Of a stretch of DNA of 64,000 nt, positions 7,735 to 37,020 are shown piece by piece (position 1 is the stretch's first letter; each line of letters opens with the position of its first letter). The notes under the pieces were generated by a model. It searched no databases, was not told the DNA's origin, and saw only the letters and a program-made list of their open reading frames with translations. Location of the stretch: IMG/VR virus record IMGVR_UViG_3300025121_000282, positions 1-64,000 of that record. One strand, given 5' to 3'. A program made the translations under genes and the position numbers.

Positions 7735-8526
7735 ATGGGTGCTGGATTCGTAGACTTAGACCTTGAAGATGGCGACAGCAAAGCCAACAAGTCCCTGACA
7801 GGGGGTAGAACTGAGACCTACAAGGGTATCAAGAACTACACCAACAGACTTTCTTTTATTTGGTATAACCAGATACCGGGTACTTCTGAAAAAGACCCTA
7901 TAGAAAGTCGGTATGCCACGGATACACGCCCCAAGTTCAAGGGTGCAAATGTTGCATATAAGAAAGACTCGGGCCTCGGATTCGTAATATACGAGGGGGA
8001 CAACGAGTTTATTAAGAGCGCCATAGGCGATTCCAAGGGTAGAGTAATCACCCTGGTAGTGAAATACTTGACCGACAAGGATGGCAATCTCATCAAGGGT
8101 GCCATTTCGCCTGAGCGCGGGTGGGAAGTTATACCGTGGGTTATGGCAAAGCAGCGCTTTGACGAACTCATGAAGTACCACAAGCAGAGCCCGTTCCAGA
8201 CTCATGACATTCTGGCGTCGTGCGAGAATTCCGAATTCCAGAATTTCAAGTTTATTTCGTGCAATGAGGCTTTGTGGCGCAATCCCAAACTCAGCAAGAA
8301 TATTCTTTCAGCCGCTGCTACTTTTAAAGAGGAAGAACTCTTAAAGCAGTTGGGCACAATTCGGTCGGACCAGTGGATTCTGGAGAAGTTGGGTAAGGGA
8401 CCCGGGTCGTCTGGCAATGTTGCCGACCTCGTAGCAGATGCTATTGACCTGGACGACCTTACCGCGGGCAGCAAGGCAGCTGGTGGCGACGTCCCCACGG
8501 ACTACGACGACCTACTGGCTCCTTGA
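7735..8526 (+). CDS. single-stranded DNA-binding protein-like (gp32-type)
   Basis: Aromatic- and Lys-rich core, strongly acidic C-terminal tail (DYDDLLAP), GGAG ribosome-binding site, GC-richer codons suggesting high expression, and location in the recombination cluster. Confidence 0.55.
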   Translation: MGAGFVDLDLEDGDSKANKSLTGGRTETYKGIKNYTNRLSFIWYNQIPGTSEKDPIESRYATDTRPKFKGANVAYKKDSGLGFVIYEGDNEFIKSAIGDSKGRVITLVVKYLTDKDGNLIKGAISPERGWEVIPWVMAKQRFDELMKYHKQSPFQTHDILASCENSEFQNFKFISCNEALWRNPKLSKNILSAAATFKEEELLKQLGTIRSDQWILEKLGKGPGSSGNVADLVADAIDLDDLTAGSKAAGGDVPTDYDDLLAP

Positions 8527-9170
8527 TCTACGGGCTTGACCCATCCCTAAATGGATTTGGTTGGGCGAAGCTGAATGGTTCTGGGCTGTTTGCAAATAGC
8601 GGCAGAATCCACACTTCGCCTAAAAACCAATTTGTCCATAGGCACTGGCACATAAAAACAGAGTTGGGTTCCATCATAGAGCCTAACTCTGTTGTAGGCA
8701 TTGAGAGCGTAGCCTTTGAAGGCACTCAATCCGAGGGGTTGTATGCCCTGTACACACACACAATGGAAGTGTTGTGGCAAAAGGGGTGTGACGTTGTACT
8801 CTTTGACCCCACTACCCTAAAGTGTCTCTCAAAAGAGAAATGGGCCGTAGACCCAGAAATAAAACCTTTTATAACTATGGACAAACCTGAGATGATACAG
8901 GTTGCCACCCAACTTTCTAATAACAATTTTAAGTCTTCAGATGAGGCAGACGCCTACTTGGCTGGGTACTTTGCAGATAGGTTTTGGCAACTGTACGATG
9001 GCCGAATAAGTGTTGGGGACCTTGGCCCATCTGAACAAAAATCTTTTGCGGGGATTAAGCAACCCACAAAAGGTAAAAATGCTGGACAGATTTTAAAAAC
9101 TGGTGCGATTTTTAGAGAAAACGTAAGATTTTTTCGATTTTCGCGCCATGACTTAAGTTTTGAGGAGTGA
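8523..9170 (+). CDS. ruvC: RuvC-like Holliday junction resolvase
   Basis: RNase H-fold acidic motifs 'GLDPSLNGFG', 'GIESVAF' and 'DEADA'. TTG start overlaps the upstream stop. Confidence 0.85.
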   Translation: MIYGLDPSLNGFGWAKLNGSGLFANSGRIHTSPKNQFVHRHWHIKTELGSIIEPNSVVGIESVAFEGTQSEGLYALYTHTMEVLWQKGCDVVLFDPTTLKCLSKEKWAVDPEIKPFITMDKPEMIQVATQLSNNNFKSSDEADAYLAGYFADRFWQLYDGRISVGDLGPSEQKSFAGIKQPTKGKNAGQILKTGAIFRENVRFFRFSRHDLSFEE

Positions 9171-9173: not shown

Positions 9174-10433
9174 ATGGCTATGACATCCGCTCAGGTTGGC
9201 CTTTCTTTTTTAAAAAAGAAGTATAAAGATGTATATGACACCTCATACACAGAGATTTCCGAACAAAAACAAGTACCACACATACCTACTGGAAGTATAA
9301 TTCTTGACAACCTTATAGGCGGCACCCGGATAGACGGCAACAAGAGAGTGTGTCCCGGGTGGCCCAAGGGCAAAATCGTAGAGTGTTACGGGCATGAGAG
9401 TTCTGGTAAGTCTACAGTAGCCATGCACTACTGTGCCCAGATTTTGGCTGCAGGTGGGTCTGTTTGTTATGTAGACCTGGAGAATGCATTTTCGCATGGG
9501 TACGCGAAAAACATGGGCATCGACATACACAGCGATAGATTTATTTTGTTGCAACCGTATACATTTGAGGACGCATTTAATATTATAGAAGTTATGGTTG
9601 AAGCAAAGGTTGATGCAGTCATCATAGACTCGGTGTCCGGATTGATCCCTAAAGCTGTGTTTGAGGCCGAATTAGGCACCGGTCAACAGGTAGACTCGTT
9701 ACCTAAGTTGATGTCCCAGAATTTGAAAAGGGTGGTCCAACTACAAAGAAAGTGCGGGCTGATTACCACCATTTTCTTTGTGAATCAGGTTCGTGACAAA
9801 ATCAAGACCAGTAAGTACGACACCGGTCCCAATGAGGACACCAGCGGTGGCCGCGCTCTTAAGTTTTATGCAACACTAAGAATAAAGCTTAGGAGAAAAT
9901 CCATCGAATCGGCTATGGTCAGGGACCCCCTTACTGGAGATTCTAGCAAGCAGGCCATATCAAACGTCATCCAGGTGACTGGGGTTAAGAACAAGATAGA
10001 TTCTAGACAAAACCATACCGCACTTATGAACATAAGATACGGACATGGCATCGACAATTATAGGAGCATAATGGACATAGCCATTATGCGCAAGATTATA
10101 ACAAAGTACAACAAAACATACCTTGAGTATGTAGGCAGTTCTCCAGAGGTGTCATTCGGTAGGCCCGCTGACGATGGTACTTGGTCCCCCATGGCTGGCT
10201 CCAAAAATGGCATTGAACAATGTAGAGCGTTCATCATAAATAACCCATCTGTGTTCAAGGATATCCTGTCTAGGGTGATGGAATACTTGTCTACTGGTGT
10301 GCAGGAAATAAGTTCCGAAATGGTGGAAGGTGAAGAGCTTGAGTCCCAAACCGTGGGTGGTCAAGAAGATTTAGAGGCAGATGAAAACGTCCCAGATATT
10401 GCTGATTTGATCGGGGATGATGACATAGAGTAG
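9174..10433 (+). CDS. recA: RecA/UvsX recombinase
   Basis: 'IPTGSIILD', Walker A GHESSGKS, 'IIDSVSGL', 'FVNQVR' and 'GGRALKFYA'. Confidence 0.97.
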   Translation: MAMTSAQVGLSFLKKKYKDVYDTSYTEISEQKQVPHIPTGSIILDNLIGGTRIDGNKRVCPGWPKGKIVECYGHESSGKSTVAMHYCAQILAAGGSVCYVDLENAFSHGYAKNMGIDIHSDRFILLQPYTFEDAFNIIEVMVEAKVDAVIIDSVSGLIPKAVFEAELGTGQQVDSLPKLMSQNLKRVVQLQRKCGLITTIFFVNQVRDKIKTSKYDTGPNEDTSGGRALKFYATLRIKLRRKSIESAMVRDPLTGDSSKQAISNVIQVTGVKNKIDSRQNHTALMNIRYGHGIDNYRSIMDIAIMRKIITKYNKTYLEYVGSSPEVSFGRPADDGTWSPMAGSKNGIEQCRAFIINNPSVFKDILSRVMEYLSTGVQEISSEMVEGEELESQTVGGQEDLEADENVPDIADLIGDDDIE

Positions 10434-10444
10434 GCACACTGGTC

Positions 10445-11608
10445 ATGATTACAATTAGGATCAAGAATTTTCAAGCCATAACTGAGGCCGTACTAGAAGT
10501 ATCTGGTTTTACGACATTAGTAGGAAGGTCTAATGTTGGGAAATCGTCTGTTATACGTGCCATACAGTCTTGCATCACCAACAAGCCTCCCGCTGGATAT
10601 GTGAGAAGAGGAACTACCTCGGCGCAGGTTCAAATCTCAGATGGCAATTTTACTTTTGGGTGGGAAAAAGGCAAATCTGTATCTAAGTATACCGTAAACC
10701 AAACTACGTATGAAAAAACAGGCAGAGACGTACCCGACGAAATAACCAATAACGGGTACAGACAACTAGAAGTAAACGGTCAAAACCTGGATGTGCAAAT
10801 AGGGGCACAATGGTCTCCGCTGTTTATATTGTCCAAATCAGGATTCCTGCTGGCTGATTTGGTGTCTGGCTTTACCGGCTTGGCAGTTCTGATAGACGCC
10901 ATTCAATTGGCAAATGCCGATTTATCTTCTTTTAATAAGGGTCTTAATCTTCTCAAGTCTAATTTAGAGTCTACAACTGGGAGACTCGTAGGCTTTGATG
11001 GCATAGACCCTTTCAGAGATATAGTTGTCGGGATCGAAGGCTTAGTGGAGACAGCCAACGCCAAAAGGTCTGCACTTTCACAACTTAAAGAATACAAAGA
11101 CAAGATTGATGTAGAAGCACTAGTTTGTATACACAACAAAAGTATAAAACTGGTGAACATACCCGATGTAAACATAAGCACAGACCACATAAACATCCTT
11201 GTGGACTTGCACAACAAGTACCACTTGTACCACCGTCTGAGTAACTTTTGTGTTTTAGACTTACCCGAGGTGGACCTTGATGAGTTGTTACAGAAGCAAA
11301 ACGACAGAGACACACTAATTAAGGTAAACAAAGAGTTTGTCAGTCTTTGTTATGTTTCGGATCTGTCCGCTCCCGAGGTACCACATGTGCCAGACGACTT
11401 GTTTGACAAGTCCACCAAACTAGACGGTCTGCGTGTGGTGAATGGCCAATTAAGCTCTTTGGTAACTACAATAAACAGTCTTACTGCTGAACTAAAAGTC
11501 ATAGACAACCAAATAGCCGACACGGATGTCGAATTAGACACACTGTTGGCCTCCATGTCTATGTGCGACGTGTGTGGAACAATAATACATGATCACGCTA
11601 GTAACTAG
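10445..11608 (+). CDS. sbcC: SbcC/Rad50 N-terminal half (Walker A head, coiled coil, terminal zinc hook)
   Basis: 'IRIKNFQA', Walker A GRSNVGKS, Q-loop-like 'QIGAQWSP', coiled coil, ending CDVCG close to the stop. No signature or Walker B motif. Confidence 0.85.
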   Translation: MITIRIKNFQAITEAVLEVSGFTTLVGRSNVGKSSVIRAIQSCITNKPPAGYVRRGTTSAQVQISDGNFTFGWEKGKSVSKYTVNQTTYEKTGRDVPDEITNNGYRQLEVNGQNLDVQIGAQWSPLFILSKSGFLLADLVSGFTGLAVLIDAIQLANADLSSFNKGLNLLKSNLESTTGRLVGFDGIDPFRDIVVGIEGLVETANAKRSALSQLKEYKDKIDVEALVCIHNKSIKLVNIPDVNISTDHINILVDLHNKYHLYHRLSNFCVLDLPEVDLDELLQKQNDRDTLIKVNKEFVSLCYVSDLSAPEVPHVPDDLFDKSTKLDGLRVVNGQLSSLVTTINSLTAELKVIDNQIADTDVELDTLLASMSMCDVCGTIIHDHASN

Positions 11609-12569
11609 AAGCGACGTCCATTTGTCAGATGTTAGTCCTAAATCCAGGACTGACGACTACAAAGAGGCTATGTTTAATAAGCTCACCACAATATTCAAAA
11701 TGGCCGCCTCATTGGAAGCAGATGCCATCTTAGACGCTGGTGATTTGTTTCACGTCCCAGCTGCGTCTAGAAACACTCATGCTCTGGTGAAAAGAGCCAT
11801 AGAAGTGCACAGAGAGTGGGACATACCCACCTATGTACTGCCTGGAAATCACGACCTGCAGATGGGGTCTTACGATTCCCTAAATAAGCAACCGTTAGGT
11901 GTGATGTTTGCGTCTAAGACTGTATTGCCTCTGTGGGGGGATAACGAATTTGTTTTAATAAAAGATGGTATAAAAGTGCGGGTGGTGGGTGTACCATATA
12001 GTCCAAAACCATCTTTGGCTGACTTCAATATAAAGAAAAAGGACGAAGACATACTCATTTGTGTTACGCACGCCATGGTTGCAAAAGATGGAACTTTTGC
12101 ATGGAAGGGTGAGTACGAAACCGAGCCAATTATGTCGTGGGACCAATTATCCGAATTTGAACCTGACGTATTTTTTGGTGGTCACTGGCACAGAGACCAG
12201 GGGGCCGCGTTGCACAATAACAAGTGGTTTGTCTATCTTGGGTCTATAGCCAGAGGGTCATTATCTCATGACAACATTGGCAGAACGCCCCGCATCGGTG
12301 TTATAACTATCGACAGAATTGGTGGCTGTGTTAATGCCAATGTTAAAACACACACACTGCCTGTGCCACCCTCAGACTCTGTTTTCAACATGGAACAACA
12401 TGCTGAGACTGTAAATATTAGGTCTAGGATAGCAGACTTTGTCACCAAACTTACTTCTGAGTCATTCATCCAGAGTACTTCTCCTGTTGATGCCATAAAA
12501 AATAGAAAAGACTTGTCTCCTGAGATTATAGACTTAGTAGTAAAATACCTAACTAACGCTGCAAAGTAA
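11589..12569 (+). CDS. sbcD: SbcD/Mre11-like metallophosphoesterase nuclease
   Basis: Phosphoesterase motifs SDVH, AGDLFH, PGNHD, VTHA, GHWH and 'LGSIAR'. Confidence 0.92.
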   Translation: MITLVTRSDVHLSDVSPKSRTDDYKEAMFNKLTTIFKMAASLEADAILDAGDLFHVPAASRNTHALVKRAIEVHREWDIPTYVLPGNHDLQMGSYDSLNKQPLGVMFASKTVLPLWGDNEFVLIKDGIKVRVVGVPYSPKPSLADFNIKKKDEDILICVTHAMVAKDGTFAWKGEYETEPIMSWDQLSEFEPDVFFGGHWHRDQGAALHNNKWFVYLGSIARGSLSHDNIGRTPRIGVITIDRIGGCVNANVKTHTLPVPPSDSVFNMEQHAETVNIRSRIADFVTKLTSESFIQSTSPVDAIKNRKDLSPEIIDLVVKYLTNAAK

Positions 12570-12570
12570 A

Positions 12571-13398
12571 ATGTCCAGATACCTAAGCTACACAGGCATG
12601 TCTGTTTATAATGACTGCCCACTTAGATACAAGTGGCAGTACATTGACCAAAAAAAACCTGAGGACCCTGAAAATAAAGCTGGTACGGTGTATGGGTCGG
12701 TAATGGGTAGGATGCTCGAAAGATTTTATAATCAGGAAATGTGGAGAAACACCAGCACTGTTGTTCAAACATTATTGAATTTTGTAGACAAAGACGTAGC
12801 TCAGGTTGAATTTAAAAATAAAGACATAGACTACCCGAAAGCTAAACTAGACAGAAACCAAGTAATAGCTGATATAAACTCTCACATACCAGAAATGGTA
12901 AGGACAATCCAACGCAACTCTCTTTTAGGTATGTATGCTAAGTCAGAAGTTAAGATGAGCATTACTTCTGAAATAGATGGATGTGGGGAGTGGGAGATAA
13001 CCGGTAAAGCGGACCTGATATACACGCAGAAGGGAAAAACCTTCATCTTAGATGGTAAAGGATCTCCTAAAAGAGAAAAATATACGGACCCGGACCAACT
13101 ATTGTCGTATGCCTTGTTATACTGTAACCTACACGGGGTACCGCCAGATGGACTGGGTTGGGTATTTTTTAGATTTACTGGTGACGATTCTTTGTTGTGG
13201 CTGGACTTTACCATGGACAGTATCTTGCTGTTTAAGTCCAGGCTGTACAATACCATTAGGTCCATACATTCTGGTAAATTCGACCCCACCCCCTCAGTAA
13301 ATACGTGTAGAATGTGCCAGTACACAGACTGCAGTGCACGACTCTGTGCTAAAAAAGTTGTTAATACCTTCTCGTCAAGTGGAGCGATAGACTTATAA
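12571..13398 (+). CDS. PD-(D/E)xK nuclease (RecB/AddB/Cas4-like) with probable Fe-S cysteines
   Basis: 'YNDCPLRY', 'GKADL', 'ILDGK', 'QLLSY' and C-terminal 'CRMCQYTDC' (1+3 Cys arrangement). Confidence 0.85.
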   Translation: MSRYLSYTGMSVYNDCPLRYKWQYIDQKKPEDPENKAGTVYGSVMGRMLERFYNQEMWRNTSTVVQTLLNFVDKDVAQVEFKNKDIDYPKAKLDRNQVIADINSHIPEMVRTIQRNSLLGMYAKSEVKMSITSEIDGCGEWEITGKADLIYTQKGKTFILDGKGSPKREKYTDPDQLLSYALLYCNLHGVPPDGLGWVFFRFTGDDSLLWLDFTMDSILLFKSRLYNTIRSIHSGKFDPTPSVNTCRMCQYTDCSARLCAKKVVNTFSSSGAIDL

Positions 13399-13682
13399 TG
13401 TCAGAATTAACCGACAGGATACTCAAGCTGCGTGGCCAGAGTAAAACCCTTACCACTAGAAGAGCCACTCTAGTTGGACAGATTGATGCTAGCAAAGACC
13501 GGTTAAGACAGATTATAGACGAGATTAAGGCCAAGGGCTACGAGCCGACAACGCTGGGGGATACTATTAAATTAGAAGAGAGCCAGTTGTCTGTGCAGCT
13601 AGCCACCATTGAGAGTGAGTTGCAAAATGCAAACAGAGAACTCACTCGGATTGAAGAGGCCATAAGTGCAAATCGTCGTTAA
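13398..13682 (+). CDS. small coiled-coil protein
   Basis: 94 aa with a continuous heptad pattern and a central turn (KGYEP); translationally coupled on both sides. Confidence 0.75.
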   Translation: MSELTDRILKLRGQSKTLTTRRATLVGQIDASKDRLRQIIDEIKAKGYEPTTLGDTIKLEESQLSVQLATIESELQNANRELTRIEEAISANRR

Positions 13683-14841
13683 AGCTGCAGATTTATCCAA
13701 CACTCTAGACTTGGCTTCCTTGGTTCAGGAGGACAAGGATGACGCCCCGCTGTACAACTCAGTGGTATTTAAGTACCACAATCCCACTGAGGTACTTGCG
13801 CATGCTGCTATGAAAACCATGGACCGCTTTGGCATATTTGTATTACCCCTTCAAGTAGTCTCCCCCTCCTTTGACCCTGTAGCTATATCCATAGAATCTC
13901 TGAAGAAGGCCATAGACACAACAGACGACGACGAATTTATAACCATTAGCACTGGTACCTCTGTTTCTCTTCAGTTTTTATCTAGTGATGTAAAGTTACC
14001 TATTGTAAATCCTAAGGGATTCCCCAAACTTATTGATGCCGTTCCTAACTCCAGAGTGGGTGACCTGCCTGTTTTAGTTCTAAGACAGGCTTTAGAGTTA
14101 TGTAAGTCATACATAGGCAAAGACCCGTCTAAGCCCAACGCAATGGTGGCCGAGACTAGGAGCAGAAAGGCAGACCCCCAGGTCCCTAACAGTGTTGATG
14201 ACCACGCCATGTTGGCTCTAGACATGGCATGCCAGTCTGTCTTTTCAGACCCTAGTCTGTCTTTTCCATTTAGAATAGAAGCTGCACACATTAGTAAGTG
14301 TATTTCTCTTTTGAAAAAATTGCCCCCCGACTACATGTTGGAAATACACAACAACTCCACATGTATAGGTATAAAATCCAAATTTGGCGTATTTGTGTTT
14401 AGACAGAGTCCAATAGGGTTTTATCCGAGTCTTGTAAGTTACCTAGCGTCCATGCCCAGCACTACAGACCCGGATGCTGACATTCTTCAGATAAACTCAC
14501 AAGATTTAATAAAGGCAATAAAAATTATCACAGTCCCGCTATCTGATACAGAAAACAGAATGTCTGTGTTTGTGGGCTCTGGAGATTCTAAAATTAAGCT
14601 TTCCACCACCACTTCAGGCGAAACCTCGTCTACTGTGGTGTCGTGTACAAGGCCCTCTAACTTGTCTAATGAATTGGTATTTGACATAAACTACTTATAC
14701 CTGAAACAGGCCATCTCTCAGTTGGGCACTCCGGATGTGTTTTTGGTTACTTACAGAGATAAAGTCAAGTCCAACTGGGTACAAGTTGTTGCTACCCTGG
14801 GGACTTCTTGCGGGTCTATAGTTTTTGCCAAGAAACGATGA
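13666..14841 (+). CDS. DNA polymerase sliding clamp (beta/DnaN-like)
   Basis: 391 aa (beta-clamp size). N-terminus 'MQIVVKAADLSNTL' and C-terminal 'FDINYLYLKQAI' resemble DnaN alpha/beta repeats, and clamp-loader genes are nearby. Confidence 0.6.
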   Translation: MQIVVKAADLSNTLDLASLVQEDKDDAPLYNSVVFKYHNPTEVLAHAAMKTMDRFGIFVLPLQVVSPSFDPVAISIESLKKAIDTTDDDEFITISTGTSVSLQFLSSDVKLPIVNPKGFPKLIDAVPNSRVGDLPVLVLRQALELCKSYIGKDPSKPNAMVAETRSRKADPQVPNSVDDHAMLALDMACQSVFSDPSLSFPFRIEAAHISKCISLLKKLPPDYMLEIHNNSTCIGIKSKFGVFVFRQSPIGFYPSLVSYLASMPSTTDPDADILQINSQDLIKAIKIITVPLSDTENRMSVFVGSGDSKIKLSTTTSGETSSTVVSCTRPSNLSNELVFDINYLYLKQAISQLGTPDVFLVTYRDKVKSNWVQVVATLGTSCGSIVFAKKR

Positions 14842-15479
14842 ACATGGACTTTCTAGACATAAAAAACCGTGCGAACAGGGCTCTTTCTATCTACGATGAT
14901 CTCATTGCAGAAAAAGCAAGTATAGAAGCAAGTATACGCAAAGACACACACGAAGTAGAAAAAACTCGTCAGGCCATACTTATACTTCAAGAGTTGTATG
15001 ACCAACTTATTACTACTTGTGTTAAATCCATAGCTGACACAGTCACCGTGGGGCTGCAAGCAATATTTCATGACCAAAATTTGGTGTGTGTCCCAATTGT
15101 AGAAAAGCAACAAAGTAGAGTACAAGTAGAATTTAGAGTAAAAGAAGTATGTGTCGATGGGGAAACAGAAGGAGACATACTCACTTCTTTTGGTGGTGGT
15201 GTTGCTGCCATAGTTGACATGGTGTTACGTCTATATGCTTTAATTAAGTCCCCCTCACTAAAAAAGTTTTTGGCTCTAGACGAATCTTTGGGGGCTGTTT
15301 CGGATGAGTACATCCCCGCTACTGTTCAATTTATAAAAGAGTTTTGTAAAACGTCATCTGTGGATGTGTTATTAGTTACACACAAGCCAGCATTTTCTGA
15401 AAATGCCGATTTGAATTTCCAAGTTCAAAAAGACTCTTCTGGGTATAAGATAATAAAAACAGCAGAGTTTAGAACATGA
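14808..15479 (+). CDS. sbcC: SbcC/Rad50 C-terminal half (signature, Walker B, H-loop)
   Basis: Short coiled coil, then signature 'SFGGG', Walker B/D-loop 'FLALDESLGAVS' and H-loop 'LLVTH'. No Walker A. Confidence 0.85.
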   Translation: MRVYSFCQETMNMDFLDIKNRANRALSIYDDLIAEKASIEASIRKDTHEVEKTRQAILILQELYDQLITTCVKSIADTVTVGLQAIFHDQNLVCVPIVEKQQSRVQVEFRVKEVCVDGETEGDILTSFGGGVAAIVDMVLRLYALIKSPSLKKFLALDESLGAVSDEYIPATVQFIKEFCKTSSVDVLLVTHKPAFSENADLNFQVQKDSSGYKIIKTAEFRT

Positions 15480-15886
15480 CTGAAGACATACGCAACCAAC
15501 TTGATAAAGTAATAAAACTGCACAGAGAAATATACATTAACTCTAGAACAGAACGTGCCCCACAAAATTGTGCATATAACGCAGAGGCCACAGTGGGTAT
15601 GAATGGTTTCTGCGTAAAGACTCATGTTTGCTCGCTGCAAAACGCTCCAATCCAGGTATTGTGCGATGACCTGAATACAGCAATAAAATGCCCCTCTTTT
15701 ACTAAATACAAAACAACTGGGGATCTTAATGCAGAATACGAAGCCATACTGTCGGACCCAGACCAATTGTCTATACACTACCCAGAAATTAGAGCACTGA
15801 AATGGGTACTGTCAAAAATGGACCAAGAACCACAAGAACAGCACCACCGATTTTCTTGGAAACGGCTCTTAGGTCTTATACCGTAA
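15476..15886 (+). CDS. hypothetical Cys-containing protein
   Basis: 136-aa ORF with an ATGA overlap to the upstream gene; five Cys. Confidence 0.65.
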   Translation: MTEDIRNQLDKVIKLHREIYINSRTERAPQNCAYNAEATVGMNGFCVKTHVCSLQNAPIQVLCDDLNTAIKCPSFTKYKTTGDLNAEYEAILSDPDQLSIHYPEIRALKWVLSKMDQEPQEQHHRFSWKRLLGLIP

Positions 15887-22046: not shown

Positions 22047-24483
22047 AATAAACCTTGGCGGTGTCATTAATTTAGATGGTTTTGTAGACGTTTCTATGTC
22101 TAATTTGGATTGGCTTGATGTGGACCCGGAAAGTTATAGGGAACACACACAACTACCTCGACAGAATGATGTTGTCGACCAGCTGAGTGGGCTGTGGAAT
22201 GGCCCAGACGCCAGTCATGCGCCGCCTGTCAACACCTCTATATTGTATGCCCCCCCGGCCGGCAGGACAGCTGGTTTTAATCCGGAAGCTGTATTTAAAT
22301 ACACCAGACTTAGTATAGCCGCTGGGCACAAGGGTGCTGACTTATACAACAGAATCGCTAGTATCATAAACCAATTTGCCCCTGACTTTGTGTCTAGCCA
22401 CTCGCGCATAGCCTCTACGCCACATGACGAAAAATACACCGCATTTAAAGACACACTATCCAACATAATTGCTTCTGAGCTTGGACTGTTAGGGAAATTA
22501 TACCTATACGCAAGTGATTTTAGTAAGTGCGAGTCTGGGGAAATTTTTAAGTTTTCTAAATCTGTAGGGATTAAGGCTACGCGTCTTTTGGCTAAAGACA
22601 AGTGTACTGACTGTATTTTCAAGCAAAATAACAAGTGCAATCCGTCTGGAATGAGTCTACATTCCTCGTTATCACTTGATAATCAACTTTTATCAGAGTT
22701 GGGTGTGTCCAACCCTGTTTCGGATATCCGTGCCGCCATTGTTTCTCACCTGGACCCAGCACCTGTAGTAAAAACCTCACACACTCCTTTTCTCATTAAC
22801 AAACCAGTAAGCGTATCAGCCGCACAGGCTGACGAATTCCTAGACTCAATAGAAGCTCCCCAAGCTGTCAAAAACAGTGACAACGATCGGCTAACCACTG
22901 TTTTGTATCAAAAGGCATGTCTGGGCAGCATCCCTATAAAGGGTGAATACAACAAAGTAGCATACGAGTTAGACTCGCTACACATTCATCATATGATTGG
23001 GTCTCAGTCTTTCAAGGATTGTACGTCTGCTGCACATTCTTTGAGGAACTCCAAAAATTTCGCTCCATTCATTGCTAAGTCTATATGCAAGTGTGGTGAT
23101 GTTGCTGTCTGTAACAAAACAAACCTGTATATTCATGATGACAAAACCCAACCATACCCTGACTCCTTTGAGGCTGTAAGAACAACTATTGACGCTGCTA
23201 TAAACCACGGATACAAAAGCGAACAGTTAGGGAAAAAAGCAGCTAGTCTCCTTGGTATTACCAAATTTACGTCCTTGCAGATTCTGTCAAAATTTTTAAG
23301 TGTCGCAGAGTCAATAAAGGCACAGAAGTTCGCTTCGCCTGAGATAATAAATACGCCGGTTACACTTACAGAGGCTGATAGAGTGATAGAGTCTTCTCTA
23401 GAATCTATCGACAACAACAACACGCGCGCCCATCAAGTGTTTGTTTCCAAAATAAATGAACCCGTGATAAGCTATGCCACTATGCTGTCAGCCCGCGGTA
23501 TTTCAGTCTCGGATGGATTGAATAAGACTGCCAGTAAATTCCCTGACAGAGATACAGACAGTATTCTGAAGGAATCTAGAATACTGGAGGACTGGGGCAT
23601 CATAGGCAAGCACTACGTACACTCAAGGAACTCTGCCTCTGAGTGTAAGAGAACTAATGATTTTTTGACCAAAACAGGGTCAGCAGCAATAGTGACCGTG
23701 GTGGCTTCAGAAGCCTGTGGTGGCTGTGTGCTTAACAGGGTTGGGACATGTTCTGCCTTTAGAGCCAAACTGTCATCTACCCCGTACACACCTGAAGTAC
23801 TGGGTGTGATTTCTAGCGACGTAAAGTCAGTCAAAGCAAGCCGGGTAGCTTCAGTAGAGGCGGGGCCATCTATAGAAGGTGCCATTAAGACATTTGTCAC
23901 CAGGAATGACCCCGCCCCACGCCAGACTCCTATTTCTTTGAACTCTGGCGTGGCTTTTAGTGGTGTAACCAACACTAAAAAAGTTATTTCCGCTGCTGAC
24001 GTGTCTAGTACTGTTACTAAAGTTAGGGTAGCCATAAACAACGGGCTCCACGGTCACGCCCTGATGGAGTTTATTTCTAAACTAGACAAAGATGTGGTAG
24101 TTGCAGCCAAGAGCGACATTTTGCCCTTGGTAAAACTAAGTGGCAATCTAGGTGTTAATTACATCGACCCTGCTGCATACCCCGATTATGGTGTTTGTAA
24201 GGTTGGCCCCGCCCAGCACCAAAATCGTAAAGCCCTGTTGGTACTGGAGCAAGAGAAATGCACCGGTTGCACCATGAAAAATGCACTGGGCGATTGCACT
24301 AGATACAACAGAAGACTGGTGTCTGAGCCATCTGCTCGTACCAACGAATCGATTACGGTTCAGTCTGCCCCTATACTGAACCCTGTACACGCATTTGACT
24401 TGCAATCTACTCTAAGTATAGAATTGAATCAAGAGGTAAACACGCTGCCTCTTGAAATTAAAATGCGTGGCAACACAATGTGA
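22009..24483 (+). CDS. large protein with four internal Cys4 repeats, putative virion protein
   Basis: Four modules of the form G..(Y/H)...C-x~20-Cx(x)C-x5-8-C (the second is degenerate), plus many [RK]xA[SG] motifs. Confidence 0.55.
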   Translation: MGLRIVGMNKDLKINLGGVINLDGFVDVSMSNLDWLDVDPESYREHTQLPRQNDVVDQLSGLWNGPDASHAPPVNTSILYAPPAGRTAGFNPEAVFKYTRLSIAAGHKGADLYNRIASIINQFAPDFVSSHSRIASTPHDEKYTAFKDTLSNIIASELGLLGKLYLYASDFSKCESGEIFKFSKSVGIKATRLLAKDKCTDCIFKQNNKCNPSGMSLHSSLSLDNQLLSELGVSNPVSDIRAAIVSHLDPAPVVKTSHTPFLINKPVSVSAAQADEFLDSIEAPQAVKNSDNDRLTTVLYQKACLGSIPIKGEYNKVAYELDSLHIHHMIGSQSFKDCTSAAHSLRNSKNFAPFIAKSICKCGDVAVCNKTNLYIHDDKTQPYPDSFEAVRTTIDAAINHGYKSEQLGKKAASLLGITKFTSLQILSKFLSVAESIKAQKFASPEIINTPVTLTEADRVIESSLESIDNNNTRAHQVFVSKINEPVISYATMLSARGISVSDGLNKTASKFPDRDTDSILKESRILEDWGIIGKHYVHSRNSASECKRTNDFLTKTGSAAIVTVVASEACGGCVLNRVGTCSAFRAKLSSTPYTPEVLGVISSDVKSVKASRVASVEAGPSIEGAIKTFVTRNDPAPRQTPISLNSGVAFSGVTNTKKVISAADVSSTVTKVRVAINNGLHGHALMEFISKLDKDVVVAAKSDILPLVKLSGNLGVNYIDPAAYPDYGVCKVGPAQHQNRKALLVLEQEKCTGCTMKNALGDCTRYNRRLVSEPSARTNESITVQSAPILNPVHAFDLQSTLSIELNQEVNTLPLEIKMRGNTM

Positions 24484-31465: not shown

Positions 31466-32032
31466 GTGGAAACACCCGCACCCAATGATGAGTACCATCC
31501 CGATTCCAGAGAATTGGGGAACCATTATAATGTGGGTGATTTTGTAGCTAGACAATTACCTGATGGCGGTATCACTGACGTAGTTGGCGTAATCACCGCC
31601 GTTCTCCGTAAAATTGGATTTGTAGACGTAGAGTTTCCTACAGGAAATGAGCGGATTTCCATTGTAGAAGTGTGGAAAGTACCTAAGGACTCCATATTTT
31701 ATGCCCCCGCTACGCTGAACACTTCCATGGAAACATGGGACACCTCTATGTCTAGATATCTAGATGGGGTTAATTCTGGGTATAGCTACGCTCACCCAAG
31801 AGTTAGCAGTGTTGTTTCGAAGCACATGTTTCGTACATACAGCCCTGTAGTCTCCTTTATTAAAAGGGCTTTCTCAGCGGGGCTTTCTTCAAAACAGATA
31901 ACTGATGTGCTTGGGCGTGTTTTACCTTCCAATTCATTTGTTGAAATGCAAGAATTGGTCGCACACGTCCATGGCGAAGTCTTTAGAAGCAAATTGCCTT
32001 TACTCCAAATGGATAATATAACGGTGAGTTAA
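31466..32032 (+). CDS. hypothetical head-module protein with SH3/KOW-like N-terminal fold
   Basis: 'VGDFVAR...GVITAV...VDVEFP'; coupled to the protease gene. Confidence 0.55.
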   Translation: METPAPNDEYHPDSRELGNHYNVGDFVARQLPDGGITDVVGVITAVLRKIGFVDVEFPTGNERISIVEVWKVPKDSIFYAPATLNTSMETWDTSMSRYLDGVNSGYSYAHPRVSSVVSKHMFRTYSPVVSFIKRAFSAGLSSKQITDVLGRVLPSNSFVEMQELVAHVHGEVFRSKLPLLQMDNITVS

Positions 32033-33498
32033 TGGGGTTTATACGAACGGCTGAAGCTGCTGTCATACACACGGGCTGGACTCGTGAGCAGTGGGGTCGT
32101 ATTCGTGACGAGGCAAAAGACCAGGGCGGCAATGACCGTTTGGCCTCCGTTAATGAAGAATTTAGGCACTTTGACCCTAGCAAGTATTTGTTATCTCATC
32201 TAACAATAATGTGTTCTGTTGATGTGGAAGAGTCTCCACTACCGTTAGGTAAATTCAACTCTTCAAAAATAAAGTCTTCTTCGCTAACTAAGTTTCTACC
32301 CGGCTACGGCATAACTAATCGCAATTTCTCAGATTTTTTAGTTAAGCCTGAACACTCTAAGTACGTGAATGGCAACGGTGACTGTTGGGAACGGAAGCTT
32401 TTACTCTCTGCGTACAAGACCTTTATAGGCGGGGCAAACTATTATGAACACTTACAGGTCCCGGAATTAAATAAGGGCATAATAGTAGATGCTGTCGCTC
32501 GCGATGTCGGGGACACAATTTACATCGACCTGTTGAAAGCAACTGATCGTAAGCACACATATATAACAGAAGACCTTGAGTCGGATGTGCTTAATACAGC
32601 AAGTATGGGGTGTAACGCTTCCTTTGCTATTTGTACTAGATGTGGAAACGTTGCTATAGAAGACACGGACGTCTGTGATTGCGTGTCTCAGGGCTATAAG
32701 CTCAGTTATTACACTGACAACGACATTCGCAGGATCGTGGCTGAGCTAATAGGCCACTGGTCCGACCCCAATTCTTGTGTATTTTTTGAGTCGTCATGGG
32801 TTCGCAATCCAGCCTTTAAAGGCGCTGTAAAACGCAAAATTTTGACCCCACTTGAGGTAAACTCCTCCTCTGGTGTCCCTATCACATTTCCCGAACTAAG
32901 GGTAGCCTCTTTAACGGCCACTCGGTCGGCCCGAGTTGCTAACTTAATGTGGCCCCTACTTGTTGGAAATGTTATGGCCGATGGTACTCCTCAAAAAGGA
33001 CAAGACACTCGGCCCGATGCTCTTAAAAAGTTATACCCACAAAAAACTGCCCCTCCTGCTGAACCCGTTGTGGAGGAGCCTGAGGAATCAGACCCATCCA
33101 CTAAAGAGGAACCAGCACCTCCTCCTGAAGATATTGCCCCGCAGCAGGAGGAGTCTGTAGACCCTCCTGTGGCTGAGCCAGAGCCAGAGCCTGTTGAAGA
33201 CAGGTCCCCCGTTGAGTTGGACATACAGGATGCCAAAGACGCTCTTCGTCAGACGCTCCTGGAGCAGGTTGTAGACGAACTCACAGACAAAAATAAAAAA
33301 GAGTACGTCCCTGATCCTAACCAAGATAACAATCTGTTTGCTACTGTAGCATTGAAGCACATAAATCGTGGTAGAGTAGCCTCAGTTTTGTTTAAATCTG
33401 AAAATGATGTGCATACCACTAAGTACATACAAGCCTTAGCATCAAAGATTGGTGCAGTGCACACCTCCAGACAACCGTCTGGAATTAGACGCCCGTGA
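32032..33498 (+). CDS. prohead (maturation) protease, HK97/herpes assemblin-like, with zinc-ribbon insert and acidic Pro-rich tail
   Basis: His 'YYEH', Ser 'TASMGC', 'ICTRCGN..CDC' insert and 'FESSWVRNPAF' (ExSxVxxPA-type motif). Position before the scaffold and capsid genes. Confidence 0.78.
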   Translation: MGFIRTAEAAVIHTGWTREQWGRIRDEAKDQGGNDRLASVNEEFRHFDPSKYLLSHLTIMCSVDVEESPLPLGKFNSSKIKSSSLTKFLPGYGITNRNFSDFLVKPEHSKYVNGNGDCWERKLLLSAYKTFIGGANYYEHLQVPELNKGIIVDAVARDVGDTIYIDLLKATDRKHTYITEDLESDVLNTASMGCNASFAICTRCGNVAIEDTDVCDCVSQGYKLSYYTDNDIRRIVAELIGHWSDPNSCVFFESSWVRNPAFKGAVKRKILTPLEVNSSSGVPITFPELRVASLTATRSARVANLMWPLLVGNVMADGTPQKGQDTRPDALKKLYPQKTAPPAEPVVEEPEESDPSTKEEPAPPPEDIAPQQEESVDPPVAEPEPEPVEDRSPVELDIQDAKDALRQTLLEQVVDELTDKNKKEYVPDPNQDNNLFATVALKHINRGRVASVLFKSENDVHTTKYIQALASKIGAVHTSRQPSGIRRP

Positions 33499-33515
33499 AG
33501 GGTGTGGAGTAGACC

Positions 33516-34454
33516 ATGTCTGATCGTAATCGTTCCACCTGGAGCCGGGCGGCTGCAACCAATCGTCAGGCCGACCCGTTCACAATGAACCAGACTCGCG
33601 TTCAGCCCAGTGAGGATGCCTATGCAAATGGGGACCCGTCAACTTGGGGTGAAGATGTGGACCACAGCAACATGTGGAAGAATGAGACACGTAATGAGAT
33701 CGGCCAGCCTGTGCCGCACTCTAACGTGATAGATTCCGCGCTGCAGGTAGAGGAAGCTGCCCGTGTTGCTGCCCAGAAAGCGGCAACAGCGGCAACTACT
33801 CCTCCCCCCGTAGACCCCACCATTTTTCAGTATCACCTGAAGAGAGCAAAGCTCGCAACTATGATTGCAGAGTCTATGCTTCCTGGTGGCACCTCCGACG
33901 AGGTTGTTGTGGCCTCAGCCGGACATCTGATGTACCTCCCGGACACGGCTCTTGCAGGGCTGAGAGAAGTTCAGCGTAATGCTGGTCTGGTTAAGTATGC
34001 CAAGGAAGAGGCACCCGCTCCCGAGGCTCCCGCTCCCGAGGTTGTGGCACCCGCTCCCGAGGCTCCCGCTCCTGTGAATGCCTCAATGGACTTTGACGCA
34101 GAATTAGAAGCAGCACTTTTTGCTGGTACAGAAGAAGGTCAGGGCGGAGATAATGGTATAGAACTGCCCTCTTGTGATCTTGGCCTTGAAGACCCGGCCG
34201 AGGGTGTAGACCCAATTATAGCAGCACTGTTTGAGCAGGCACTACCCGCCCCCGTAGTGCGTGCGGCCTCGGTTACTCGGACAGCTTCCCAACAGCCCCA
34301 GGCCCCTGCTACGCCGCAGCGGCTGGGTGCGGCGCCCAGAGCGAGAATGGCCTCTGGGGACGCAAACAGAGCGTCAGCTGACCTTTCGGCCCTTTGGAGT
34401 TCAGAGCCCGACGTGTCAGCCCACTTTGGGACCCCCATCAGCATCAAAGACTAA
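33516..34454 (+). CDS. probable capsid scaffolding protein
   Basis: Ala/Pro/Glu-rich low-complexity protein between the protease and the decoration/capsid genes; strong GGAG ribosome-binding site. Confidence 0.6.
   Translation: MSDRNRSTWSRAAATNRQADPFTMNQTRVQPSEDAYANGDPSTWGEDVDHSNMWKNETRNEIGQPVPHSNVIDSALQVEEAARVAAQKAATAATTPPPVDPTIFQYHLKRAKLATMIAESMLPGGTSDEVVVASAGHLMYLPDTALAGLREVQRNAGLVKYAKEEAPAPEAPAPEVVAPAPEAPAPVNASMDFDAELEAALFAGTEEGQGGDNGIELPSCDLGLEDPAEGVDPIIAALFEQALPAPVVRAASVTRTASQQPQAPATPQRLGAAPRARMASGDANRASADLSALWSSEPDVSAHFGTPISIKD
34011..34072 (+). repeat. 26-bp direct repeat (period 36) encoding APAPEAPAP
   Basis: gcacccgctcccgaggctcccgctcc at 34011-34036 and 34047-34072. Confidence 0.9.
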
Positions 34455-34477
34455 ATAGAACTCAATCATAGCTAGCA

Positions 34478-34526
34478 GCTGAGGCCAACTTTCCGTAACA
34501 AGGAAGTTGGCCTCAGCCGTATTTGG
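34478..34526 (+). terminator. GC-rich hairpin with GTATTTG tail after the scaffold gene
   Basis: Perfect 14-bp inverted repeat gctgaggccaactt (34478-34491) / aagttggcctcagc (34504-34517), followed by cgtatttgg. Confidence 0.65.
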
Positions 34527-34618
34527 ATATCAAAGTTGGCCCAAACCTCGTTAAACCTTAAATCAAATGTTAGGTGTTAGGTGTTCATACCGTACTTGTA
34601 GTTTAAGGAGAATCAAAA

Positions 34619-35239
34619 ATGGCAGGTCAGTCTAATGCTGATTTCAAGGGAAGCAGCGATCGACTTCGAATTTTGTATCGAGGCCACTCGAATTCTAGTT
34701 CGAAGCTAACGGAAGATGCTTACACTAACACCAACCCTCCGATTGCGGCGCTTGCTGGAGTTGCCAGCAGCACCCTGACCGGAATCACCAAGACTGGTGT
34801 TCTTGGCTCCTCGGTGGCTGTCACCCGTCCGGATGCTGGTGGTGGCTACATTGGTGGCCCTCCGTCAAATGAGGCTCTCGAAGGCAACTTCCGCCCCCTC
34901 GGTCTCTTCCGTCGTGACGCCAATGGCCTCCCGAATGAGAACGACCCGGGCGTTGCATCGGAAAAGACTGCTTACCTCCACGGCGGTGGCCAGTATGGAT
35001 GCCAGTTGTACGAATCCAAGATTCTAAACACTGGCGCCGCACTTTCGCCGTCTTGGACCAGTGGTGTTCTGGTTTATTGCTCCCGCAATGGTCTCATCAC
35101 CACGCTGGACAACGCCAACAACACCCTGGAGCGGGTTGCTGCTCACAGCATGTCTCCTGCCACTGGCACCGTGATGGGCGTGGTTCTTATGGGCCCGACT
35201 TCGGCAATTGCTGAGGTTACGCTCGACCTTCACGTTTAA
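34619..35239 (+). CDS. putative head decoration/cement protein (paralogue 1)
   Basis: Gly-rich beta protein upstream of the capsid gene with an AAGGAG ribosome-binding site; clearly homologous to the next ORF. Confidence 0.6.
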   Translation: MAGQSNADFKGSSDRLRILYRGHSNSSSKLTEDAYTNTNPPIAALAGVASSTLTGITKTGVLGSSVAVTRPDAGGGYIGGPPSNEALEGNFRPLGLFRRDANGLPNENDPGVASEKTAYLHGGGQYGCQLYESKILNTGAALSPSWTSGVLVYCSRNGLITTLDNANNTLERVAAHSMSPATGTVMGVVLMGPTSAIAEVTLDLHV

Positions 35240-35250
35240 TTGGAGGTCAC

Positions 35251-36036
35251 ATGAGCTACTTTGGAATCTCAAATCAGGATTTTAAGGGGCTAGCCGGTCG
35301 GCTTCGCATCCTTTATCGGGGCCATGGCAACTGCATGGCAGTCCTGGTGGATGACGCCTACACCCAGGCTAACCCGGGTCAGGCCATCGTATCAGATGAA
35401 GCCACCCCCACTTCCAGCACCTTGACGGGTGTTACGAAGCGTGGTGTGCTTTCTGGTTCGGTAGCTTTCACTCGTCCTTCCACATCAGGCAACGTGGCTG
35501 TGGATAACATGGTAGGTGGCCCTCGTCGTCGTGGTGGTTCCAGCATCGGGGCCGCTAACGCTGAACAGGCCGTAGATGGCACCAACGCCCACGCAGAAGA
35601 TGCACGGACGCACGTAATTGGCCTGTTTATCAACGATGCAATGGGCAACCAGAGCTTCGACAATCAGGCAGGCGTTGCATCGGGTAAGATTGCGTATCTT
35701 TCTGGTCCCGTTGGGTCGGTGGGCGTCCAGGTCTACGAGACCCGGCAGCAAATTGACTGGGCCCGTGGCGGGGCTGGGGCGGCTGTCTCTTGGGGCAGTG
35801 GTCAGTATGTGTACGGGTCTATAAACGGACTTGTCACCAACCTTGTTCGTGATGCTCTGGAGTCCTATTCCACTGGCGTACTGAATGATGCCGGTAATGG
35901 ACTTACTGATGCAGCCGGTGGAGCAGTGGCCGCTCCGTCAGTGTCCATCATGGGAACCACTAAGTTCGGGCCTACTGCGGCTTTGCCAGAGGTCTGTTTT
36001 GACATGCGCTTGTTCAAGTACCGTACGGTCGCTTAA
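35251..36036 (+). CDS. putative head decoration/cement protein (paralogue 2)
   Basis: Shares 'DFKG...RLRILYRGH', 'STLTG(I/V)TK.GVL' and 'GVAS.K.AYL' with 34619..35239; GGAGG ribosome-binding site. Confidence 0.6.
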   Translation: MSYFGISNQDFKGLAGRLRILYRGHGNCMAVLVDDAYTQANPGQAIVSDEATPTSSTLTGVTKRGVLSGSVAFTRPSTSGNVAVDNMVGGPRRRGGSSIGAANAEQAVDGTNAHAEDARTHVIGLFINDAMGNQSFDNQAGVASGKIAYLSGPVGSVGVQVYETRQQIDWARGGAGAAVSWGSGQYVYGSINGLVTNLVRDALESYSTGVLNDAGNGLTDAAGGAVAAPSVSIMGTTKFGPTAALPEVCFDMRLFKYRTVA

Positions 36037-36061
36037 TCTTAATCAGTAGAGGTAAAAGAAA

Positions 36062-36937: not shown

Positions 36938-36971
36938 TCTCAGCGGTCTTCCAGACCGTTTTTCGTTCATA

Positions 36972-37018: not shown

Positions 37019-37020
37019 GG

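What the first reader, a model, noticed from the sequence alone, without database searches (positions are those of the whole stretch)
10445..15479. SbcC/Rad50 split at the zinc hook into two genes 3.2 kb apart
10445..11608 has Walker A and a coiled coil and ends just after CDVCG (hook-like CxxC). 14808..15479 has the signature, Walker B and H-loop. Between them lie SbcD, a PD-(D/E)xK nuclease, a coiled-coil mini-protein and the clamp-like gene. Rad50, SbcC and T4 gp46 are normally single chains in which both ends form one ATPase head. The interleaved intact genes argue against a simple frameshift or decay, so the ATPase would have to assemble in trans.
Basis: partly seen in the sequence, partly recalled or inferred. 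Interest (0 to 1): 0.75.

Follow-up and report, generated by a model that had tools for sequence, protein, structure and literature searches.

The report
Phage Rad50/SbcC ATPase encoded in pieces
This huge phage makes its Rad50/SbcC-type DNA-end-processing ATPase from separate genes cut just after the zinc hook, an arrangement kept in many distantly related phages, so a motor that is one chain in all studied organisms probably assembles here from two, perhaps three, proteins.

Summary

- **The two halves.** Gene 10445-11608 encodes the Walker A/Q-loop lobe, a helical arm and a C-terminal CxxC. That end is best matched in the PDB by the P. furiosus Rad50 zinc hook.
- **Genes between them.** They are intact: SbcD, a PD-(D/E)xK nuclease, a 94-aa helical hairpin ("mini") and a clamp.
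- **Conservation.** The same layout occurs in 54 of 59 related IMG/VR loci, and every N-half ends a few residues after CxxC. The halves are also separate genes in Tunturi_5 (about 108 kb apart), Bacillus phage 0305phi8-36 and the 58-kb phage vB_BboS-125.
- **Family size.** The best 150 of 3591 related protein clusters are all stand-alone C-halves.
- **Assembly check.** Contigs from four metagenome runs are colinear with the window.
- **Co-fold.** The prediction supports N-C binding: score 0.72, best control 0.03.

Most likely this is a two-chain, possibly three-chain, SbcCD-type nuclease. I found no paper describing the split. I rate it a new variant of a known kind.

The parts
10445..11608 (+). 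N-half of the Rad50/SbcC-like ATPase (387 aa). It holds head lobe I with Walker A (nt 10523-10546) and Q-loop Q122 (nt 10808-10810). The helical arm covers residues about 133-370 and contains modules of about 41 aa ending (V/L)x(V/L)P. The terminal CDVC hook motif is at nt 11564-11575, followed by 10 residues.
   Evidence: Pfam AAA_23 at 28.6 bits against a cut-off of 27, plus AAA_15 and SMC_N positions 4-51. phrog_16465. Invariant residues. Hook profile match to 1L8D and 6ZFF. AF2 model with Foldseek/VIA matches to Rad50, SMC and RecN N-lobes.
11589..12569 (+). SbcD/Mre11-type nuclease (326 aa). Its start overlaps the N-half stop by 20 nt.
   Evidence: Metallophos E 1.8e-13. Best PDB matches are P. 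furiosus Mre11 and T. maritima SbcD. TIGR00619 sbcd E 4e-9, below its cut-off. Junction sequence.
12571..13398 (+). PD-(D/E)xK exonuclease (275 aa). It is a conserved neighbour in the block. Nothing shows that it is a subunit.
   Evidence: PDDEXK_1 E 1.7e-24. Present at this position in 57 loci.
13398..13682 (+). 'Mini' protein (94 aa), an antiparallel helical hairpin with a conserved turn (consensus A-G-Y-D-P-K). It is a conserved companion of the split ATPase and a candidate third piece or accessory subunit.
   Evidence: Found in 61 loci. Alignment A7. Homologues are 0305phi8-36 gp7 (E 8e-9), Tunturi_5 gp180 (E 7e-5) and vB_BboS-125 gp34 (E 4e-12). Hairpin fold in the Atlas model. Residues 68-89 touch the C-half in the co-fold.
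13666..14841 (+). Sliding-clamp-like gene (391 aa) lying between mini and the C-half. It is probably not part of the nuclease.
   Evidence: phrog_947 processivity factor E 4.8e-10. Weak NCBIfam match to DNA pol III beta. Absent between mini and the C-half in L059, L062/63 and vB_BboS-125.
14838..15479 (+). C-half of the ATPase (213 aa from ATG 14838; the ORF is open from TTG 14808). It holds the return helix (residues 3-76), the signature-like SFGGG (nt 15186-15200), Walker B D148-E149 (nt 15279-15284), the D-loop, and H-loop H182 (nt 15381-15383).
   Evidence: phrog_15167, full length, E 5.9e-17. Invariant residues. AF2 pLDDT 92.8. Foldseek best matches are the C-terminal chains of SMC and Rad50 heads: 5H66_B, 5DAC, 9A9J_B, 1F2U_B. 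ATGA junction.

Best explanation
This is the phage's only Mre11-Rad50 (SbcCD) type DNA-end-processing enzyme, and its ATPase subunit is built from separately translated polypeptides.

What each piece supplies:
- The N-half supplies ATPase lobe I (Walker A, Q-loop), the outgoing arm and the CPxC zinc-hook motif at its very C-terminus.
- The C-half supplies a return helix of about 75 residues and lobe II (signature, Walker B, D-loop, H-loop).

How they join:
- The halves join non-covalently by completing the ABC head.
- N residues about 143-201 and C residues about 1-65 also form an antiparallel coiled coil.

How the enzyme then works (inferred):
- Two such heads would dimerise on ATP.
- SbcD, which is translationally coupled to the N-half, would bind the coiled-coil base.
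- The terminal CxxC motifs would link two arms through zinc.
- The enzyme would serve recombination-dependent replication or repair, alongside the neighbouring SSB-like, RuvC, RecA/UvsX and PD-(D/E)xK genes.
- The conserved 94-aa hairpin protein is probably a further subunit bound at the coiled coil.

Shown: gene anatomy, motifs, conservation, structural similarity, and a co-fold that passes its controls.
Inferred: the actual assembly, zinc binding, ATPase and nuclease activity, and the role of mini.
For: Complementary motifs. Each half has only half of an ABC site, with invariant Walker A and Q-loop in N and signature, Walker B, D-loop and H-loop in C.

Structure.
- The AF2 models match the N-terminal and C-terminal chains of Rad50 and SMC heads.
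- Those PDB entries (1F2U, 1II8, 3QKR, 5H66) are themselves two-chain constructs. That a head can form from two polypeptides follows from this deposited chain composition.

Hook. Invariant CxxC, with best PDB matches 1L8D and 6ZFF.

Co-fold. ipSAE 0.72 (runs 0.71, 0.73, 0.72) against a best control of 0.03. The contacts are heptad-spaced along N 143-201 and C 1-65. The mark was reached by 58 of 80 solved complexes and 2 of 110 mismatched pairs.

Conservation.
- 54 of 59 IMG/VR loci carry N ... C in the same order. Four of the other five are cut by contig ends.
- The halves are about 108 kb apart in Tunturi_5.
- They are split in 0305phi8-36, vB_BboS-125 and a distant metagenomic member.
- The top 150 of 3591 profile hits are all 98-324 aa.

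No other SbcC-like gene exists in the genome.

The genes are translationally coupled at their junctions.

Independent assemblies are colinear.
Against: - No biochemical data exist.
- The co-fold used my own alignments and three chains, which is outside the calibration. A pass for a family with solved relatives may reflect likeness only.
- The signature motif has Gly where ABC ATPases have Ser (SFGGG instead of LSGG).
- Pfam SbcC_Walker_B does not match, and SMC_N matches are below the cut-off. Fold alone cannot separate Rad50 from SMC or RecN.
- Arm length varies from 192 to 315 residues in steps of about 41 aa, with no compensating change in mini or the C-half. The distal arm therefore cannot be a canonical intramolecular antiparallel coiled coil, and its structure is unknown. 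The N-half model has pTM 0.35.
Confidence: 0.8

Rival explanations
1. Three-piece enzyme. The ancestral SbcC was cut twice, so that N-half, mini and C-half are colinear fragments (head lobe I + arm + hook | upper return arm | lower return arm + lobe II). Mini would be a structural part of the arm, not an accessory.
For: - The gene order N ... mini ... C holds in every lineage examined.
- Mini lies directly before the C-half in L059 and L062/63. In vB_BboS-125 only an AP2-domain gene separates N from mini-C.
- Mini occurs in 61 of 63 loci that have a C-half.
- It touches the C-half helix in the co-fold.
- hhalign aligns its first helix and turn with the last helix and hook of the N-half, at 42% probability.
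Against: - Mini is predicted to be a closed hairpin on its own.
- In the co-fold it lies alongside the C-half helix, not ahead of it.
- Its length is fixed at 88 +/- 1.6 aa while the arm varies by more than 120 aa.
- No mini-C or N-mini fusion appears among the top 150 relatives.
- Mini was not the tested partner in the co-fold, so it has no control.
Confidence: 0.35
2. The two genes are unrelated remnants or independent proteins. On this view the N-half acts alone as a scaffold or DNA binder, or with another partner. The C-half would be a separate SMC-like fragment, or the pair would be a decaying SbcC.
For: Neither half reaches curated thresholds for SbcC-specific models. The halves are far apart in Tunturi_5 and Magritte. 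The Magritte N-half lacks the CxxC end.
Against: - Half an ABC site cannot bind or hydrolyse ATP alone (established ABC ATPase architecture).
- All catalytic residues are invariant at 25-30% identity.
- The two halves hit the same four phage genomes in tblastn.
- The co-fold controls stayed at 0.00-0.03.
- No other candidate partner exists in the genome.
Confidence: 0.05
3. Assembly or annotation artefact, or a gene rejoined at the DNA, RNA or protein level (rearrangement, intron, intein trans-splicing), so that the real product is one chain.
For: Inteins and LAGLIDADG endonucleases do occur in neighbouring genes of relatives: SbcD in L050 and the clamp loader in L039.
Against: - Contigs from four runs in four studies are colinear, with no joints or indels.
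- Four intact, conserved genes lie between the halves.
- No intein or Hint family is listed among the Pfam families matched by any of 50 N-halves or 50 C-halves at E <= 0.01.
- The tail after CxxC is 4-29 aa, too short for a split intein.
- The halves lie about 108 kb apart in Tunturi_5.
Confidence: 0.02

Closest known systems
SbcCD / Mre11-Rad50 (E. coli SbcCD, T4 gp46-gp47, P. furiosus and T. maritima Mre11-Rad50)
   Same: It has an ABC ATPase head with all motifs and a coiled coil leaving the head. It has a CPxC zinc-hook motif that aligns with the P. furiosus hook. An adjacent Mre11/SbcD metallophosphoesterase is present, in a recombination gene context.
   Different: The ATPase is encoded by two genes cut 4-29 residues after the hook, plus a conserved 94-aa partner. 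The return helix is only about 75 residues. The arm is made of repeated modules of about 41 aa. The signature motif is SFGGG. SbcC-specific Pfam and NCBIfam models do not match.
Engineered two-chain Rad50 and SMC catalytic domains (PDB 1F2U, 1II8, 3QKR, 5H66, 3KTA)
   Same: N- and C-terminal head segments exist as separate polypeptides that form one ATPase head. These chains are the best structural matches of the two halves.
   Different: Those are laboratory truncations lacking the arm and hook. Here the division is natural and conserved, and the N chain keeps the whole arm and hook.
Mre11/Rad50 fusion proteins (Mimivirus R555 type; Bacillus phage 0305phi8-36 gp8), Yoshida, Claverie and Ogata 2011, PMC3175470
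   Same: 0305phi8-36 gp8 is a relative of the window's N-half (A6 HMM E 1.5e-36), fused behind an SbcD domain. The paper noted that one P-loop NTPase segment 'was not observed' in this phage.
   Different: The missing segment is the separate gene gp5, with gp7 as the mini homologue. In the window SbcD is not fused; it follows the N-half.
Phage 'genes in pieces' (Aeromonas phage Aeh1 NrdA split by a homing endonuclease gene; T4 topoisomerase gp39/gp60; split RNA polymerase and Pol III alpha of jumbo phages)
   Same: An enzyme that is normally one chain is encoded by separate genes whose products reassemble. Mobile endonuclease genes sit in or next to the block in relatives: AP2-domain gp33 in vB_BboS-125, and LAGLIDADG inteins in L039 and L050. 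Split Pol III and RNAP are described in PMC7824862. The Aeh1 and T4 cases are from my own knowledge.
   Different: A split SbcC/Rad50 is not listed among those cases. PMC7824862 treats SbcC as a single ABC ATPase.

Membership tests
Rad50/SbcC (SMC-superfamily ABC ATPase of the Mre11-Rad50 complex) | N-terminal ABC lobe with Walker A and Q-loop | tested here: met
   G27-S34 and Q122 are invariant in 50 sequences. AAA_23 is over its cut-off. Structural Z is 8.6-10.5 to the Rad50 and SbcC heads 3QF7, 3QKU, 6S6V and 9Q9H.
Rad50/SbcC | C-terminal ABC lobe with signature, Walker B, D-loop and H-loop | tested here: met
   FGGG, D148-E149, LGAVSD and T181-H182 are conserved. Foldseek E values of 3e-8 to 1e-6 to Rad50 C-lobes. 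Caveat: Gly replaces the signature Ser.
Rad50/SbcC | Both lobes on one polypeptide, joined by an intramolecular antiparallel coiled coil | tested here: not met
   The lobes are separate genes 3.2 kb apart, and up to about 108 kb apart in Tunturi_5. Only the basal 60 residues or so pair, in trans. The distal arm has no partner of matching length.
Rad50/SbcC | CxxC zinc hook at the end of the outgoing arm | tested here: met
   CxxC is invariant. The best PDB hits of the terminal profile are the P. furiosus hooks 1L8D (E 6.6e-4) and 6ZFF, with the motif aligned. Zinc binding itself cannot be tested here.
Rad50/SbcC | Cognate Mre11/SbcD nuclease encoded alongside | tested here: met
   The adjacent, overlapping Metallophos gene has Mre11 and SbcD as its best PDB and NCBIfam matches. 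It is conserved in 59 loci.
Rad50/SbcC | Match to curated SbcC/Rad50 sequence models (Pfam SbcC_Walker_B; NCBIfam SbcC/Rad50) | tested here: not met
   PF13558 finds nothing in the genome. SMC_N scores 16.8 bits against a cut-off of 40. NCBIfam gives only weak RecN and SMC-related N-terminal hits.
Rad50/SbcC | ATP-dependent head dimerisation and stimulation of nuclease activity | not testable with these tools
   This needs biochemistry.
Anti-phage ABC ATPases (OLD, Gabija GajA, Septu PtuA, Lamassu LmuB) | Full-length match and defence-system gene context | tested here: not met
   PADLOC hits cover only the P-loop region (residues 3-47), apart from a weak LmuB coiled-coil match. The C-half has no hit. 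The context is a phage replication and recombination block.

The most novel reading that the evidence does not exclude
A naturally fragmented Rad50 with a different arm architecture. The chain ends at the zinc hook, the distal arm is a stack of 41-residue modules in variable number with no antiparallel return strand, and a separate 90-aa hairpin protein plus a short return helix complete the base. Hook-to-head communication and ring closure would then work across non-covalent joints. This would be a distinct structural class of SMC-like complex, present in many phage lineages.
Probability: 0.35. Interest if true: 0.85.

Novelty: new variant of a known kind. Interest (0 to 1): 0.7.

Why it matters
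Rad50, SbcC and all SMC proteins studied so far fold one chain back on itself, so the hook or hinge and the ATPase head are joined by two continuous helices. How signals travel along that arm is an open question in the field.

This natural, conserved version differs in three ways:
- the chain stops at the hook;
- the return strand is mostly absent or supplied by other proteins;
- arm length changes in discrete modules.

That gives a ready-made test of which covalent connections the mechanism needs. Cultured hosts exist for relatives: Tunturi_5, 0305phi8-36 and vB_BboS-125.

It also has practical consequences:
- It corrects annotation. The pieces are currently named 'exonuclease', 'ATPase', 'chromosome segregation ATPase' or 'hypothetical protein'.
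- It explains the 'missing' NTPase segment noted for 0305phi8-36.
- It adds SbcC to the list of phage enzymes encoded in pieces.

Tried and rejected
- Megablast of the 5-kb region against GenBank phages found no match.
- Two scans of 185,579 species genomes found no relative. Each scan depends on one or two peptide patterns, and prophage-like Bacillus phages do carry the system, so this is no evidence of absence.
- My iterative search did not link the clamp gene across loci. It is too diverged, so I did not pursue it.
- Second 'N-half' hits of 605-681 aa downstream of the clamp loader are not ABC ATPases. Their N-termini show no Walker A, and Tunturi_5 annotates a transcription antiterminator at the equivalent position. 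I judged them spurious coiled-coil matches.
- I tested whether arm length correlates with mini or C-half helix length, which would indicate a paired return strand. It does not: Spearman 0.04-0.12.
- hhalign of mini against the hook end gave 42% probability, which is inconclusive.
- The profile of mini against the PDB gave only generic coiled coils.
- The AF2 N-half model is confident for the head and individual helices, but not for how the distal helices pack (pTM 0.35). I make no claim about arm geometry.
- Literature searches for a split Rad50 or SbcC found nothing. The library is incomplete.
- Mini's placement in the co-fold has no control of its own, because the tested partner was the C-half.

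Full report
**What the window is.** The window is the first 64 kb of a 314,886-bp virus record that CheckV rates complete. The same DNA is present in groundwater and soil metagenomes. All genes discussed lie on the + strand, in a replication and recombination block:
- a 263-aa SSB-like gene at 7735-8526 (named from position only);
- RuvC-like, 8523-9170;
- RecA/UvsX, 9174-10433;
- N-half, 10445-11608;
- SbcD, 11589-12569;
- PD-(D/E)xK nuclease, 12571-13398;
- a 94-aa protein ('mini'), 13398-13682;
- a clamp, 13666-14841;
- C-half, 14808/14838-15479;
- a conserved 136-aa gene, a primase, and a clamp loader.

**Check of the observation.** The N-half (387 aa) has Walker A (G27-S34) and a Q-loop glutamine (Q122). 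A helical region follows from about residue 133. CDVC lies at residues 374-377, ten residues before the stop. It matches Pfam AAA_23 above the cut-off, and matches AAA_15 and the first 50 positions of SMC_N.

The C-half matches phrog_15167 ('ATPase', 211 positions) over its full length. It carries S-F-G-G-G, Walker B D148-E149, the D-loop and the H-loop. Its probable start is ATG 14838, which overlaps the clamp gene's stop as ATGA. The SbcD start overlaps the N-half stop by 20 nt.

**Not an artefact.** Logan contigs from four runs in four studies cover 10300-15600 colinearly, with no joints or indels. One run carries a strain with three substitutions; two of the runs may be the source sample. 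The genome holds exactly one N-half, one C-half and one mini. No other AAA_23, SMC_N or SbcC_Walker_B match exists.

**The split is a family trait.** tblastn with either half finds the same four GenBank phages, always as separate genes:
- *LR745208* (485 kb): same order as here.
- *Tunturi_5* (309 kb): the N-half gp181 sits with SSB, RuvC, UvsX and SbcD. The C-half gp14 sits with the clamp, primase and clamp loader, about 108 kb away.
- *Bacillus phage 0305phi8-36*: gp8 is SbcD fused to the N-half and ends shortly after CPTC. gp7 is mini and gp5 is the C-half. Yoshida et al. 2011 had noted that one NTPase segment 'was not observed' in this phage (PMC3175470). That segment is gp5.
- *Microbacterium phage Magritte*: the halves are far apart and the N-half lacks the hook.

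The C-half query also hit several smaller Bacillus phages over part of its length. I examined one, the 58.5-kb vB_BboS-125. Its order is N-half gp32 (ending ICPLC plus 9 residues), an AP2-domain gene, mini gp34, C-half gp35, then an unannotated Metallophos ORF.

In IMG/VR, 59 loci encode a C-half. In 54 of them an N-half lies 3.3-4.6 kb upstream on the same strand, and four of the other five are cut by contig ends. The order SSB-like, RuvC, RecA, N, SbcD, PD-(D/E)xK, mini, (clamp), C, o136, primase, clamp loader is essentially invariant. A more distant metagenomic member shows the same layout.

A profile search of 1.84 billion representative proteins gave 3591 clusters at E <= 1e-3 and 1764 at E <= 1e-10. 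The best 150 are all 98-324 aa, mostly 200-235 aa, so they are stand-alone C-halves.

**The cut is at the hook.** In 48 of 49 distinct N-halves, CxxC (consensus CPTC) lies 4-29 residues from the C-terminus, and both cysteines are invariant. A profile of the last 100 residues has the P. furiosus Rad50 zinc-hook crystal structures as its best PDB hits: 1L8D at E 6.6e-4 and 6ZFF at E 1.5e-3. CPxC aligns with CPVC, and a following His also aligns.

**Structural identity of the halves.**
- The AF2 model of the C-half (pLDDT 92.8) is one helix (residues 3-76) followed by an ABC lobe II. Its best Foldseek matches are the C-terminal chains of SMC and Rad50 heads: 5H66_B, 5DAC, 9A9J_B and 1F2U_B.
- The N-half model (pLDDT 75, pTM 0.35) has a lobe I that matches Rad50, SMC, RecN and RecF heads. 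Helices follow at 133-183, 187-232, 247-265, 278-305 and 317-370.
- Fold alone does not separate Rad50 from SMC. The hook and the coupled SbcD gene argue for Rad50/SbcC.
- Several of the matched PDB entries are two-chain constructs. This shows that such heads can form from two polypeptides.

**Assembly in trans.** I co-folded N-half, mini and C-half using my own alignments A6, A7 and A8, with the C-half as the tested partner. The ipSAE was 0.72 in three concordant runs, against 0.00, 0.00 and 0.03 for the controls. That mark was reached by 58 of 80 solved complexes and 2 of 110 mismatched pairs. The calibration holds only roughly here, and a pass may reflect likeness to solved heads.

The interface includes the P-loop region and residues 103-141 of N. 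It also includes heptad-spaced contacts along N 143-201 and C 1-65, consistent with an antiparallel coiled coil. Residues 68-89 of mini lie against the C-half.

**What remains odd.** The C-half supplies only about 75 helical residues, whereas the N-half arm has about 230. Across 45 loci the arm takes lengths of 192, about 235, about 274 and about 315 residues. These are steps of one module of about 41 aa ending (V/L)x(V/L)P. Mini (88 +/- 1.6 aa) and the C-half helix (about 76 aa) stay constant and do not correlate with arm length. Most of the arm therefore has no return strand of matching length.

It may pair with the arm of a second N-half, pack on itself, or use mini. I could not decide between these.

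Mini is a conserved helical hairpin that always lies between N and C in gene order. It may be a third fragment of the ancestral arm or an accessory subunit. hhalign to the hook end is inconclusive at 42%.

**Origin (inference).** Mobile endonuclease genes occur in this block in relatives:
- an AP2-domain gene lies between N and mini in vB_BboS-125;
- a LAGLIDADG domain is inserted in the SbcD of L050 and a LAGLIDADG intein in the clamp loader of L039.

Insertion at the hook loop, as in other phage 'genes in pieces', is a plausible origin for the split. No intein or Hint family is among the Pfam families matched by the 50 N-halves or the 50 C-halves, so protein splicing is unlikely.

**Literature.** Searches found no description of a split Rad50 or SbcC. 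The broad jumbo-phage survey describes split RNA polymerase and split Pol III alpha but treats SbcC as one ABC ATPase (PMC7824862). The Tunturi paper does not discuss these genes. The library does not cover subscription journals, so this is absence of evidence only.

**Verdict.** The arrangement is a conserved feature of many phage lineages: an SbcCD-type enzyme whose ATPase is encoded in two, possibly three, pieces cut at the zinc hook. I rate it a new variant of a known kind. It has clear experimental handles, and the structure of the arm is unresolved.

Noticed in passing
window 15476-15886: A 136-aa gene follows the C-half directly, with an ATGA stop/start overlap. It is conserved at this position in 58 related loci. 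It has no Pfam, PHROG or NCBIfam match. In one distant relative a NYN-domain gene occupies the slot.
   Followed up: partly
L050:5027-7414 and L039:12919-15657 (IMG/VR relatives): The SbcD of L050 (795 aa) carries a LAGLIDADG domain. The clamp loader of L039 (912 aa) carries an intein splicing domain plus a LAGLIDADG domain. SbcD ORFs of about 690-717 aa also occur in L020, L022, L039 and L049, but the L020 ORF showed only Metallophos.
   Followed up: partly
L072 (Bacillus phage vB_BboS-125, record 22411-23417): A 372-aa open frame with a Metallophos (SbcD-like) match lies in a stretch of the GenBank record that has no annotated CDS. It sits just downstream of the split ATPase genes.
   Followed up: partly
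L001 (Bacillus phage 0305phi8-36 gp5, gp7, gp8): The published Mre11/Rad50 'fusion' gp8 was reported to lack one NTPase segment. That segment is the separate gene gp5, annotated 'chromosome segregation ATPase'. gp7 is the mini homologue.
   Followed up: yes
window 15186-15200 and alignment A8: The ABC signature motif of the whole C-half family reads S/A-F-G-G-G, with Gly where ABC ATPases have the phosphate-contacting Ser.
   Followed up: no
L071:4992-6044 (Microbacterium phage Magritte gene 155): This N-half relative (350 aa) matches only HMM positions 4-296 and has no terminal CxxC. The 96-aa gene before its C-half is not recognisably mini. It appears to be a hook-less variant of the split system.
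   Followed up: partly
window 32001-38000 and 56001-60000: G+C rises to 0.49-0.56 and 0.51-0.53 against a background of about 0.43, with negative AT skew at 34-40 kb. This may be foreign or differently oriented genes. No tRNA genes occur anywhere in the window.
   Followed up: no
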